64,000 nucleotides of DNA, taken from sequence record NC_048674.1; one strand, written 5' to 3'. The notes under the pieces are model-generated. The model was not told the DNA's origin and searched no databases. It saw only the letters and a list, made by a program, of their open reading frames with translations. Shown here piece after piece: positions 2,917-11,391 of the stretch. A program made the translations under genes and the position numbers. Positions within the stretch are counted from its first letter, which is position 1, and each line of letters starts with the position of its first letter.

Positions 2917-3207
2917 ATGGAAGAAATAAACGAAGATACCTATAAAGATGTAATCAATGACGCATTAAAGAATGTACAAACCGAATTGGTTATCCGGATT
3001 GATAGTGAGAATTTTCTTGTGTTTATCAACGATATACAGTATCATGATGGAAAGGTTGTATTAGATTGGAGTACTCCACATGAAGACATGAAGGAAGAAC
3101 TATATCCACATGTTAAAAATGCAGTACAAGCCATGTATAACCAAACCAATGTTGAGATTGAAAAATCTTTCTTTGGGCGTTTTCTTGATCTTTTCAAAAG
3201 GAAATAA
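2917..3207 (+). CDS. 40: Head vertex assembly chaperone gp40
   Basis: Size, position between uvsX and gp41, and motif DWSTP...ELYPHV..AVQA typical of gp40. Confidence 0.8.
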   Translation: MEEINEDTYKDVINDALKNVQTELVIRIDSENFLVFINDIQYHDGKVVLDWSTPHEDMKEELYPHVKNAVQAMYNQTNVEIEKSFFGRFLDLFKRK

Positions 3208-3208
3208 A

Positions 3209-3724
3209 ATGACAGAACAAACCTGCGACCGTAATGATTGTTATGATGTAACTGGATTTCCAGAGGATACCCTTGTTACCTTTTGTGCCCCCGACATTTA
3301 CGGGGACATGAGGGAACAAACATGGACTCTATATCAACTCCTAGAGATTCAACAGGGTAACCGGATCCTTCTAAAGGGACCGGAAACCGGTAAATACGCA
3401 ACGATCTTACGTATGGTCGATACGGAGTTCACAGAACCGGTCAACCCCAACGTATGGGAAATCCATATGTCTAACGGGAAATCTTGGTTGTGTGCAGAGA
3501 ACCATCAAGTTCTGAGTCTATATGACCGCAAGAGCCCCTATCAGGCGCTATATGCAGCTCAATATTGTACTCCTGATGGTGGTGTTGTGAACCGGGTAAA
3601 AAGGGTTCGTCAATACAAATATAAGGCTAGGTTCTGGATGCATATCATCACTGAGGACGATGTACCGTTCGTGCTGAATGATACCGGTATTCTTCATTTT
3701 TCCTCACAGAAAAAGGTTGTATAA
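3209..3724 (+). CDS. Stand-alone Hint (intein-like) fold protein, probably catalytically degenerate
   Basis: Block A-like GFPEDTLV, block B-like CAENHQVL, block F/G-like MHIITEDDVPFVLNDTGILHF. ATG 3209 is coupled to the gp40 stop. Confidence 0.55.
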   Translation: MTEQTCDRNDCYDVTGFPEDTLVTFCAPDIYGDMREQTWTLYQLLEIQQGNRILLKGPETGKYATILRMVDTEFTEPVNPNVWEIHMSNGKSWLCAENHQVLSLYDRKSPYQALYAAQYCTPDGGVVNRVKRVRQYKYKARFWMHIITEDDVPFVLNDTGILHFSSQKKVV

Positions 3725-8990: not shown

Positions 8991-10994
8991 ATGAAAGAAC
9001 AAGAAGGTAAAATCCTAAGTGATTACGAACATATTTTCCTCAATAGTGATATGTATGTTGGGTCGCTTTCGGAAGAAACCCATTTAGTGTTGGTTGATGG
9101 GAATTTTGTAGAAAAGCAATACATTCCGGGTTTGGTTAAAATTATCGATGAAATTATCGATAACTCAGTTGATGAAGCTATTCGTACCGATTTCAAATTT
9201 GCTAATAAAATTGATATTGTTGTTGATGACCAAACCAATCAGGTATCCATTTCTGATAATGGTCGTGGTATCCCGCAATATGACGTAAAGACCCCGGAAG
9301 GCGAAACCATCCCATATCCACAAGCTTGTTACACCCGAGCCCGTTCCGGTGGTAACTTCTCTGCTGATCGTAAGGGTATCGGTAAAAATGGTGTTGGTTC
9401 GGTATTGACCAACCTATACTCTACAATGTTCCGTGCGACAACTTGTGATGGGAAAAATACGGTCACAATCTATTGTACACAAAATGCAGAACACCAATCC
9501 TACACCAAGAAAAAAGGTGGCACTCAGGGTACAACTGTTGAATTTATCCCAGATCTACTTGACAAATTTAACATCTTTGGTGGTATGCCTCCTGACGTAG
9601 TTGATGTTATCCGTTCTCGGGTAGAAATACTTTCTATTTTGTTCCCACAAGTAAAATTCACATTCAATAAGAAAAAAGTAGATTCCAAGTTCAAGAAATT
9701 TGCTAGTGACTTTGGGAATCCTGTTATCTTTGAAAATGAGAATTGTTCGTTCTTTATCGGTACATCAGATGAATTCCGTCAACTGAGTTATGTTAACGGG
9801 GTTCACACTAAACAGGGTGGTAACCACGTTGAATATCTGATAAACAGTCTATGTGATGAATTGACCCCCATGATCAAGCGTAAGTTTAAGGTCGAGATTA
9901 ACAAAGCCCGTATCAAGGAAAACACTTTGCTGTTCCTTTCTCTTCGTGGCTTTGAGGGTGCCAAATTTGACGGACAAACTAAAGAACGGTTGAGTAATTC
10001 CAACGGTCAGATCAAGGATCACTGCGGAATCGATATCAAGTCCATAGCCAAAAAGATGATATCCAACGATTCTGTTATCATGCCAATTGTAGAGAGTGCA
10101 ATTGCAAAACGGGATGCGGTGGAAAAGGCACTAGCGACAAAAGCACAAAAGAAGGCTCTAACTGCCAACGTACCAAAACATATCCAAGCGAACAAATATG
10201 GAAAGAAAGGGTTTGAAACCACTCTGTTCTTGACCGAGGGTGATTCTGCAAGTGGCCCACTGGGTATAACTCGCGACCACGACACTCAGGGTGGATTCCC
10301 GTTGAAGGGTAAACTTCTATCTGTTCATAAATGCGAAAAGGTAAAGGTAATTGCCAACAAAGAGATTGCCAATATTATTTCAATTCTTGGTATGACTCTA
10401 GATGATACAAAAGAGCTACCATCAGGAGATTTCTTTGTAAATAAAGATGGTTTCATTGTTGCAGAAAATGATGAAATGTTGGTAAATGGTAAATGGGTTG
10501 AAACTCGTGGTATTGTAACCGGTAAGGATTGGGAACAAACTCTACAGCCTGATATGTTAAAATATCGTGGTCAAAAAGGGGTTCGACGTAACACCAAGGC
10601 AAATTATGATTATGTTGCTATCTTGGTAGATGCGGATCCAGATGGACGAGGACATATCAGTAACCTGATAATCTCGTTGTTCCATAAGTACTGGAAACAC
10701 TTTATTGATCAAGGTCGTTTGTTGGTATGCCGTACCCCGGAATTCATTAGTCGAAACGGGAAAGAAACCGTTTGGAGTTATGATACGGTAGAATTTCACT
10801 CCAAGACGTTCAAGGGTTCTGGGTGGAAGCATGAACACGTTAAGGGTCTGGGTCAGTTAGACCGAGCTGACTACAAGAAATGTATTCGAGATCCTTATAT
10901 GGAGGTTGTTCGGGTTGATGAACAAGCAGCAGATGCGTTAGAAATGTTCTTTGGAACCGAATCGGACCTTCGTAAGGTGTGGATGGATGATTAA
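8991..10994 (+). CDS. 39: Type II DNA topoisomerase large subunit, fused gp39+gp60
   Basis: GHKL motifs EIIDNSVDE, DNGRGIP, GKNGVGS; TOPRIM TEGDSA, PLKGK, DADPDG; KGLG. Single uninterrupted ORF. Confidence 0.97.
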   Translation: MKEQEGKILSDYEHIFLNSDMYVGSLSEETHLVLVDGNFVEKQYIPGLVKIIDEIIDNSVDEAIRTDFKFANKIDIVVDDQTNQVSISDNGRGIPQYDVKTPEGETIPYPQACYTRARSGGNFSADRKGIGKNGVGSVLTNLYSTMFRATTCDGKNTVTIYCTQNAEHQSYTKKKGGTQGTTVEFIPDLLDKFNIFGGMPPDVVDVIRSRVEILSILFPQVKFTFNKKKVDSKFKKFASDFGNPVIFENENCSFFIGTSDEFRQLSYVNGVHTKQGGNHVEYLINSLCDELTPMIKRKFKVEINKARIKENTLLFLSLRGFEGAKFDGQTKERLSNSNGQIKDHCGIDIKSIAKKMISNDSVIMPIVESAIAKRDAVEKALATKAQKKALTANVPKHIQANKYGKKGFETTLFLTEGDSASGPLGITRDHDTQGGFPLKGKLLSVHKCEKVKVIANKEIANIISILGMTLDDTKELPSGDFFVNKDGFIVAENDEMLVNGKWVETRGIVTGKDWEQTLQPDMLKYRGQKGVRRNTKANYDYVAILVDADPDGRGHISNLIISLFHKYWKHFIDQGRLLVCRTPEFISRNGKETVWSYDTVEFHSKTFKGSGWKHEHVKGLGQLDRADYKKCIRDPYMEVVRVDEQAADALEMFFGTESDLRKVWMDD

Positions 10995-10996
10995 CA

Positions 10997-11030
10997 AAAA
11001 GGGAACCGATGGGGTTCCCTTTTCTTTTTT
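10997..11030 (+). terminator. Intrinsic terminator
   Basis: AAAAGGGAACC-GATGG-GGTTCCCTTTT plus T run. Confidence 0.8.
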
Positions 11031-11064
11031 ATTGTGTATAATAGTGGAAAATAGAGGAATAATT

Positions 11065-11391
11065 ATGGCTAACCTAAATGATATCGCTCACTCAGTAAGA
11101 CCTACAATCTCAATTGGAGACAAATCCACCGTGTGGTTTATCCGTGAAAAGCTTGTAGGGTGGTTTGAAGAAAGTGTAGAATACTGGCTTGAATGGTGTA
11201 AAGAAGATGGTATAGAACCTATCGAAGAGGTTCTAAAAGAAAATATGAAGCTTCTCAACGCAATAAAAACATGTTCTACAATCACAAAGAAAACTGTTGA
11301 TTGGAAACTGGTTATGGGTTATGATGTTGACATTGATAAGCTTGCACTCGACTGGTTAGATCTATATCTTGACTATGAGGTTAAAAAATGA
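11065..11391 (+). CDS. Hypothetical protein
   Basis: ATG 11065 with GAGGA SD. Confidence 0.6.
   Translation: MANLNDIAHSVRPTISIGDKSTVWFIREKLVGWFEESVEYWLEWCKEDGIEPIEEVLKENMKLLNAIKTCSTITKKTVDWKLVMGYDVDIDKLALDWLDLYLDYEVKK

What the first reader, a model, noticed from the sequence alone, without database searches (positions are those of the whole stretch)
10400..10605. Unsplit topoisomerase contains both 'extra' segments found at the T4 gp39/gp60 split
Seen: a ~60-aa in-frame insertion between ILGMTLDD and YDYVAILVDADPDG. From memory, its first half (FFVNKDGFIVAENDEMLVNGKWVETRGI) resembles the T4 gp39 C-terminal tail (IIVNENDEVQINGKWITVGEL). Its second half (DMLKYRGQKGVRRNTK.NY) resembles the T4 gp60 N-terminus (DMKKYKLQNNVRRSIK..MNY). 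Established: in T4 the gene is split here by mobA, and gene 60 has the 50-nt bypass. Inference: this is either a pre-split ancestor in which an inserted domain provided a tolerated break point, or a re-fusion after endonuclease loss. The first half also loosely resembles the intein block B region.
Basis: partly seen in the sequence, partly recalled or inferred. Interest (0 to 1): 0.65.

Follow-up and report, generated by a model that had tools for sequence, protein, structure and literature searches.

The report
Fused phage topoisomerase keeps T4 split-site domain

Summary
ORF 8991-10994 (+), 667 aa, is the fused gp39+60 topoisomerase II large subunit of an Aeromonas phage that is 100% identical to AS-sw/AS-zj. 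Residues 473-538 (nt 10407-10604) form a 66-aa in-frame insert in the TOPRIM loop, where sister phages have 5-6 residues.

This is already described. Manning & Atkins (bioRxiv 2022) report eight Aeromonas phages with exactly this fused CTE+NTE insert and call it MobA "hit and run". A 2024 Nat Commun paper solved the T4 domain.

New here:
- Every known member of this clade carries the insert.
- Synonymous sites are saturated, and omega for the insert is about 0.1-0.3.
- Fused forms occur in at least four to six other deep T4-like lineages.
- Salmonella phage SEA1 is an endonuclease-less intermediate.

Re-fusion versus pre-split ancestor remains unresolved. The intein resemblance is not supported.

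The parts
8991..10994 (+). Single-chain DNA topoisomerase II large subunit gene (gp39+60 fused), 667 aa
   Evidence: ORF list and translation. Pfam HATPase_c and DNA_gyraseB hits. 100% identical to Aeromonas phage AS-sw/AS-zj 'DNA topoisomerase II large subunit'. The AlphaFold model (pLDDT 88.8) matches phage T6 topo II 8yon_C at E 8.8e-70.
10236..10250 (+). TOPRIM acidic motif EGDSA (aa 416-420), upstream of the insert
   Evidence: Motif position; invariant E416, G417, S419 and A420 in a 75-sequence alignment.
10407..10520 (+). CTE-like half of the insert (about aa 473-510), homologous to the C-terminal extension of split gp39
   Evidence: BLASTP against the T4 gp39 tail gives E 5e-8. It aligns with the ORF1 tails of T4, 50AhydR13PP, Stupor and SEA1. 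Predicted strands 481-484, 489-491, 495-498 and 501-504, with pLDDT 86-91.
10521..10601 (+). NTE-like half of the insert (about aa 511-537), homologous to the unique N-terminal extension of gp60
   Evidence: BLASTP against T4 gp60 residues 1-33 gives E 4e-5. It aligns with the ORF2 heads of the split phages. Predicted strand 514-517 and helix 522-527, with pLDDT 84-85.
10602..10646 (+). Core TOPRIM strand and DxDxDG metal-binding motif (aa 538-552), equivalent to the 'homR' region. In T4 the 50-nt bypass follows this motif; no gap is present here.
   Evidence: Continuous reading frame through DADPDG into the next residues. Alignment with T4 gp60. D547, D549, D551 and G552 are invariant.

Best explanation
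The gene encodes a working, single-chain topoisomerase II large subunit. Its TOPRIM domain carries a small, folded, beta-rich 'pendant' domain of 66 residues.

This domain is the same one that in T4 is assembled in trans from the C-terminal extension of gp39 (CTE) and the N-terminal extension of gp60 (NTE). Both extensions are delivered by the MobA homing-endonuclease/bypass cassette.

The most likely history (inferred) has three steps:
- An ancient MobA-type cassette invaded the topoisomerase gene of the common ancestor of the phage 65/CC2 group (Emmerichvirinae) and its metagenomic relatives.
- The endonuclease gene and the 50-nt bypass were later deleted.
- The CTE stop and NTE start were lost in frame, which recreated one ORF ('hit and run').

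Since then the insert has been inherited vertically and kept foldable by purifying selection. It hangs on the outside of the enzyme rather than taking part in catalysis. In the fused protein its original role, holding the two split halves together, is no longer needed.
For: Shown:
- Homology of both halves to the T4 CTE and NTE.
- Per PMC11461880, the T4 insertion is an external pendant without DNA contact, and an artificial gp39-gp60 fusion is active.
- Per Manning & Atkins, CTE and NTE belong to the mobile cassette, and inserted and empty alleles are 96-99% identical in six clades. In my core tree the split forms likewise sit at short tips next to insert-less alleles.
- Salmonella phage SEA1 has lost mobA. 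Its CTE stop and NTE start lie 48 nt apart in the same frame, and the bypass is still present. This is the expected intermediate.
- Outgroup phage topoisomerases and the sister clade lack the insert, so it is a gain on the stem of this clade.
- All 20 phage records with at least 60% identity, and all 6 protein clusters with at least 68% identity, carry it.
- dS is saturated (>1.5). The dN of the insert is about 3x that of the rest, and omega is about 0.12-0.27.
- No MobA homologue was found in the nearest complete genome.
Against: - The direction of change is not demonstrated. The insert tree (69 columns) is unresolved.
- Fused forms sit on long, deep branches, including the most basal T4-like lineages. 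This also fits an old contiguous domain.
- No recently re-fused allele, that is, a fused form close to a split or empty allele, was seen.
- Two precise deletions (endonuclease and bypass) are required.
- The omega values rest on saturated dS and are rough.
- The structure of the window's insert is predicted, not solved.
Confidence: 0.6

Rival explanations
1. Pre-split ancestor. A contiguous insertion domain existed first in some T4-like topoisomerases. An HNH endonuclease gene then landed in its surface loop. The endonuclease plus the two flanking half-domains became the mobile MobA cassette through co-conversion. On this reading the window's gene descends from, or recombined with, a never-split allele.
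For: - The CTE and NTE together form one compact fold. That is easier to explain as a split pre-existing domain than as two tails invented by a mobile element.
- Fused forms occur in at least 4-6 independent deep lineages, including the three most basal ones in the rooted tree: P0126, P0130 and P0132/Vibrio phage EniLVp02.
- The join in the fused form loses nothing. The length from the conserved Trp to the DM motif is 18 residues, the same as 7+11 in the split Aeromonas and Acinetobacter forms.
- The insert in this clade is old and under purifying selection.
Against: - Outgroups and most lineages lack the insert.
- Split-form tails have short branches near the centre of a star tree and fused inserts have long ones. 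That pattern is what repeated derivation from cassette-like sequences followed by drift would give.
- The SEA1 intermediate shows that endonuclease loss happens.
- Cassette gain is directly documented.
Confidence: 0.3
2. The insertion domain is a decayed half of an intein (Hint fold), and its endonuclease became a free-standing gene. On this reading the CTE and NTE would be non-splicing relics of N- and C-intein pieces. This concerns the ultimate origin of the domain and could be combined with either history above.
For: - After the T4 topoisomerase, the Foldseek list for the insert model is dominated by inteins, but only at E 0.5-4.
- One metagenomic fused form (P0126) carries a true intein a few residues downstream, inside the DxDxDG motif, so inteins do target this region.
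Against: - No Pfam Hint or intein hit for any of seven inserts, even at E up to 10.
- hhalign against the Hint-fold ORF of this window finds nothing.
- No splicing residues flank the insert. The insert is about half the size of a mini-intein.
Confidence: 0.06
3. The resemblance is a chance or compositional similarity between an unrelated lineage-specific loop and the T4 tails.
For: The segments are short. tblastn of the insert against T4 genomes alone gives only E 0.7 in a 2.3-Gb database.
Against: - Both halves match in order at the same site, with E 5e-8 and 4e-5 pairwise.
- The profile gives E 2e-16 against the T4 chain.
- The motifs are conserved across 17 fused and split forms.
Confidence: 0.01

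Closest known systems
Aeromonas phage 'clade 7' fused Topo2L with CTE+NTE insert ('hit and run'), Manning & Atkins, bioRxiv 10.1101/2022.08.31.505936
   Same: [quoted passage not shown]
   Different: Nothing essential differs. The preprint left open whether the event is recent or the tails are functional. Here the insert is shown to predate the radiation of the clade and to be under purifying selection. Fused forms are also found in further lineages. The preprint's Table 1 is held only as an image, so I could not check that this exact phage is listed.
T4 topoisomerase II TOPRIM insertion domain (PDB 8YO3/8YO4; Nat Commun 2024, PMC11461880)
   Different: In T4 the domain is naturally assembled from two polypeptides, and the solved chain is a laboratory fusion. 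Here the fusion is natural. The linker between the halves differs in sequence and is three residues shorter (18 against 21 between the conserved Trp and the DM motif).
MobA homing-endonuclease/bypass cassette of T4 gene 39/60 and relatives (HY01, Aeromonas 50AhydR13PP, Acinetobacter Stupor)
   Same: The CTE and NTE coding segments are homologous and lie at the same insertion site.
   Different: The window has no HNH endonuclease ORF, no 50-nt coding gap, and no stop/start between the halves.
T2/T6-type unsplit gp39 (605 aa; PDB 8YON)
   Same: It is a single-chain large subunit with the same ATPase, transducer and TOPRIM architecture, about 40% identical.
   Different: T2/T6-type proteins have only a few residues where the window has the 66-aa domain.

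Membership tests
Type IIA topoisomerase ATPase/TOPRIM subunit (GyrB/ParE/phage gp39) | GHKL ATPase domain and GyrB transducer domain | tested here: met
   Pfam HATPase_c (36.3 bits, cutoff 26.4) and DNA_gyraseB (53 bits, cutoff 27).
Type IIA topoisomerase ATPase/TOPRIM subunit (GyrB/ParE/phage gp39) | TOPRIM acidic motifs (E-G-D-S-A and DxDxDG) intact and in one reading frame | tested here: met
   EGDSA at aa 416-420 and DADPDG at aa 547-552. These columns are invariant in 75 homologues.
Type IIA topoisomerase ATPase/TOPRIM subunit (GyrB/ParE/phage gp39) | Overall fold like a solved phage topo II large subunit | tested here: met
   The AlphaFold model matches 8yon_C (T6) at Foldseek E 8.8e-70.
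T4-type TOPRIM insertion domain (CTE+NTE) | Sequence homology to both the gp39 C-terminal extension and the gp60 N-terminal extension, at the same loop | tested here: met
   (E 2e-16).
T4-type TOPRIM insertion domain (CTE+NTE) | Same three-dimensional fold as the solved T4 insertion | tested here: met
MobA mobile cassette | HNH homing-endonuclease ORF between the CTE and NTE | tested here: not met
   The frame is continuous across the junction. No MobA homologue in the nearest genome at E up to 0.01.
MobA mobile cassette | 50-nt translational bypass after the DxDxDG motif | tested here: not met
   The ORF reads uninterrupted through DADPDG and onwards.
MobA mobile cassette | Closely related allele without the insert (recent insertion) | tested here: not met
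   All relatives with at least 68% identity carry the insert. The nearest insert-less proteins are about 54-56% identical.
Intein (Hint fold) | Hint sequence blocks and splicing residues (N-terminal Cys/Ser, C-terminal His-Asn plus a nucleophile) | tested here: not met
   No Pfam Hint or intein hit at E up to 10. The ends of the insert lack these residues. hhalign against a Hint ORF finds nothing.
Intein (Hint fold) | Structural similarity to Hint domains | tested here: inconclusive

The most novel reading that the evidence does not exclude
The fused form is not a scar but the original state. On this reading a contiguous pendant domain arose once in early T4-like topoisomerases and survives in several deep lineages: this Aeromonas clade, Vibrio phage EniLVp02, and metagenomic P0020, P0040, P0102, P0126 and P0130. 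The MobA cassette was then born when an HNH endonuclease gene landed in its loop. The CTE and NTE would be two halves of a pre-existing domain that now travel with the endonuclease and let it split an essential enzyme without killing it.
Probability: 0.3. Interest if true: 0.6.

Novelty: already known. Interest (0 to 1): 0.3.

Why it matters
The T4 gene 39/60 split, with its 50-nt ribosomal bypass, is a classic puzzle. The fused Aeromonas allele shows that the two tails delivered by the mobile cassette form one stable domain. That domain can persist for a long time inside an unsplit enzyme.

This bears on two questions. One is how homing endonucleases can interrupt essential genes without introns or inteins. 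The other is how such invasions are reversed.

The phenomenon itself is published, so the value here is confirmation plus some added facts: the age of the insert, the selection acting on it, further fused lineages, and the structural match to the solved T4 domain.

Tried and rejected
- **Insert phylogeny to decide direction.** With 16 rows and 69 columns, only the window's own clade is supported. Monophyly of the split forms is neither found nor rejected (p-AU 0.17). The result is uninformative.
- **Profile search of 1.84 billion representatives.** Three of the hits are Bacteroidota surface proteins with Cys-rich repeats that resemble the CTE core. I judge this convergent or chance similarity.
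- **MobA search.** The window's own assembly is not held. The nearest record, G001, has no MobA homologue. An empty result in one record is weak evidence.
- **DNA for P0126.** It could not be fetched, so its intein and insert were read from the protein only.

Full report
**What is there**

The window is from a T4-like Aeromonas phage. The topoisomerase gene is 100% identical at the DNA level to Aeromonas phages AS-sw and AS-zj, which are about 230 kb, and 94% identical to CC2. Relatives fetched from this group (phage 65, ZPAH1, Aswh_1, avDM6) are classified in Straboviridae, Emmerichvirinae.

ORF 8991-10994 (+) encodes 667 aa. It has GHKL ATPase and GyrB transducer Pfam domains. Both TOPRIM motifs are intact: EGDSA at aa 416-420 and DADPDG at aa 547-552.

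Between ILGMTLDD (aa 465-472) and the core strand that starts at Y539 lies a 66-residue segment, aa 473-538, nt 10407-10604.

**Check of the observation**

I took the true T4 sequences from NC_000866.

- Whole-protein BLASTP runs colinearly into the T4 gp39 tail, up to residue 507 of 516.
- The gp60 N-terminus, residues 12-46, aligns to window residues 521-552.
- With the conserved flanks removed, the insert alone still matches the gp39 tail (E 5e-8, 13/23 identical) and the unique part of gp60 (E 4e-5, 9/18).
- A MAFFT alignment of fused, split and insert-less proteins shows the window's segment as gp39 C-terminal extension (CTE) followed directly by gp60 N-terminal extension (NTE). T2-type, 44RR-type, Acinetobacter PhT2 and Vibrio CZ01 proteins have only a short linker there.
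- The sister clade of the window's group (phiAS5-like, P0011-P0019) has 5-6 residues in the aligned interval.
- A profile built only from seven fused inserts hits the T4 gp39-gp60 chain in the PDB at E 2e-16.

**What the insert is**

AlphaFold2 on a 75-sequence alignment gives mean pLDDT 88.8, with the insert at 84-91. It predicts four short strands from the CTE half (481-484, 489-491, 495-498, 501-504). From the NTE half it predicts a strand (514-517) and a helix (522-527). Folded alone, the insert keeps this pattern at pLDDT 77.6.

The paper behind these structures is PMC11461880. It describes a "unique TOPRIM insertion (~70 aa)" in T4, formed by the gp39 C-terminus and the gp60 N-terminus. 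The insertion hangs outside the TOPRIM domain like a pendant, does not touch DNA, and has little effect on activity. [quoted passage not shown] They used an artificial gp39-gp60 fusion, which was active and better behaved. The window's protein is the natural counterpart of that construct.

**What is already known**

Manning & Atkins (bioRxiv 10.1101/2022.08.31.505936) showed that the MobA element repeatedly inserts at this site in Topo2L. The element comprises:
- an HNH endonuclease;
- an in-frame CTE of about 44 aa;
- an NTE of about 45 aa that includes a region homologous to the deleted host sequence;
- the 50-nt bypass.

[quoted passage not shown] In these phages the endonuclease and bypass have been excised. 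They leave open whether this is recent or whether the sequences function in the fused protein. The finding is therefore already described. The scan also noted this same stretch twice.

**What I can add**

1. *Age.* All 20 phage records with at least 60% protein identity hold the full insert. So do all six 90%-identity clusters with at least 68% identity in a 5.8-billion-protein collection, including the metagenomic P0008, P0009 and P0010. No insert-less allele exists in the clade. The core tree makes these six a 100%-supported clade, and the insert tree agrees (99/97).

2. *Selection.* Across the clade, synonymous sites are saturated (dS >1.5). The dN of the insert is about three times that of the rest of the gene, for example 0.287 against 0.092 for the window versus phage 65. 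Omega is about 0.12-0.27. Insert identity is 35-69%, against 67-87% for the rest, among the diverged members (the near-identical pairs 65/avDM6 and ZPAH1/Aswh_1 aside). The insert is therefore old and constrained, though looser than the enzyme core. These omega values are rough because dS is saturated.

3. *More fused lineages.* Fused inserts occur outside this clade:
   - P0020, P0040 and P0102, on contigs that carry T4-like genes such as rIIB, Rnl2, DNA ligase and the topoisomerase medium-subunit gene;
   - P0126, P0130 and P0132;
   - Vibrio phage EniLVp02, which is identical to P0132.

   In the core tree they form at least four to six independent, long-branched lineages. Split forms sit at short tips beside nearly identical empty alleles.

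4. *An intermediate.* Salmonella phage SEA1 has no mobA. Its CTE stop and NTE start are 48 nt apart in the same frame, and the bypass is still present.

5. *No endonuclease nearby.* No MobA homologue is found in the nearest complete genome.

**Which history?**

Outgroup phage topoisomerases (Ackermannviridae, a Rhizobium phage, a Chryseobacterium phage) lack the insert. Most T4-like lineages lack it too. It is therefore a gain on the stem of the window's clade.

Three things favour re-fusion after cassette invasion: cassette gain is documented, the SEA1 intermediate exists, and split-form tails lie near the centre of a star-like insert tree.

The alternative is not excluded. In that reading a contiguous domain came first and was later split by an endonuclease gene. 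Four points speak for it:
- The two tails make one compact fold.
- Fused forms include the most basal branches of the rooted tree.
- No recent re-fusion was seen.
- The join in the fused form loses nothing relative to the split Aeromonas and Acinetobacter forms.

The insert tree has too few columns to decide. I put re-fusion at about 0.6 and a pre-split origin at about 0.3.

**Intein remark**

**Verdict**

The phenomenon is already in the literature. Interest is modest. The open point worth a proper study is the direction of evolution between fused and split forms.

Noticed in passing
P0126 (840-aa metagenomic protein, Logan SRR13425445; no DNA held): This Topo2L has a fused CTE+NTE insert and also a true intein inserted inside the DxDxDG motif. 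The sequence reads DAD, then Cys...His-Asn, then Cys-Asp-Gly. That is a few residues from where T4 has its 50-nt bypass, so this TOPRIM site is a hot spot for several kinds of selfish element.
   Followed up: partly
L023:2380-3130 (Salmonella phage SEA1, OQ927978): This is a split topoisomerase gene with the mobA endonuclease entirely gone. The ORF1 stop and ORF2 start are 48 nt apart in the same frame, with two stops between them. The bypass gap is still present after DADVDG. It is annotated as three separate topoisomerase CDSs.
   Followed up: partly
L024:1049-3109 (Vibrio phage EniLVp02, PP209424): A cultured Vibrio phage with a 686-aa fused Topo2L carrying a divergent CTE+NTE insert. It is identical to the metagenomic representative P0132 and branches deeply in the core tree.
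   Followed up: partly
P0125, P0127, P0131 (Bacteroidota-type surface proteins with CHU_C/Por secretion tails): The CTE core of the insert profile matches, 4-6 times per protein, a Cys-rich repeat of the form I-C-x-N-D-S-x-x-x-x-G-x-W. This is probably a convergent beta-hairpin motif and not homology.
   Followed up: no
window 10951-11391 (+): A 146-aa ORF, as listed from a TTG start, overlaps the last 44 nt of the topoisomerase gene. The real start is probably a later ATG. It was not examined.
   Followed up: no
window 3110-3724 (+): This is the stand-alone Hint-fold ORF noted by an earlier report of this scan. I used it only as a comparator. It shows no profile similarity to the topoisomerase insert.
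   Followed up: partly
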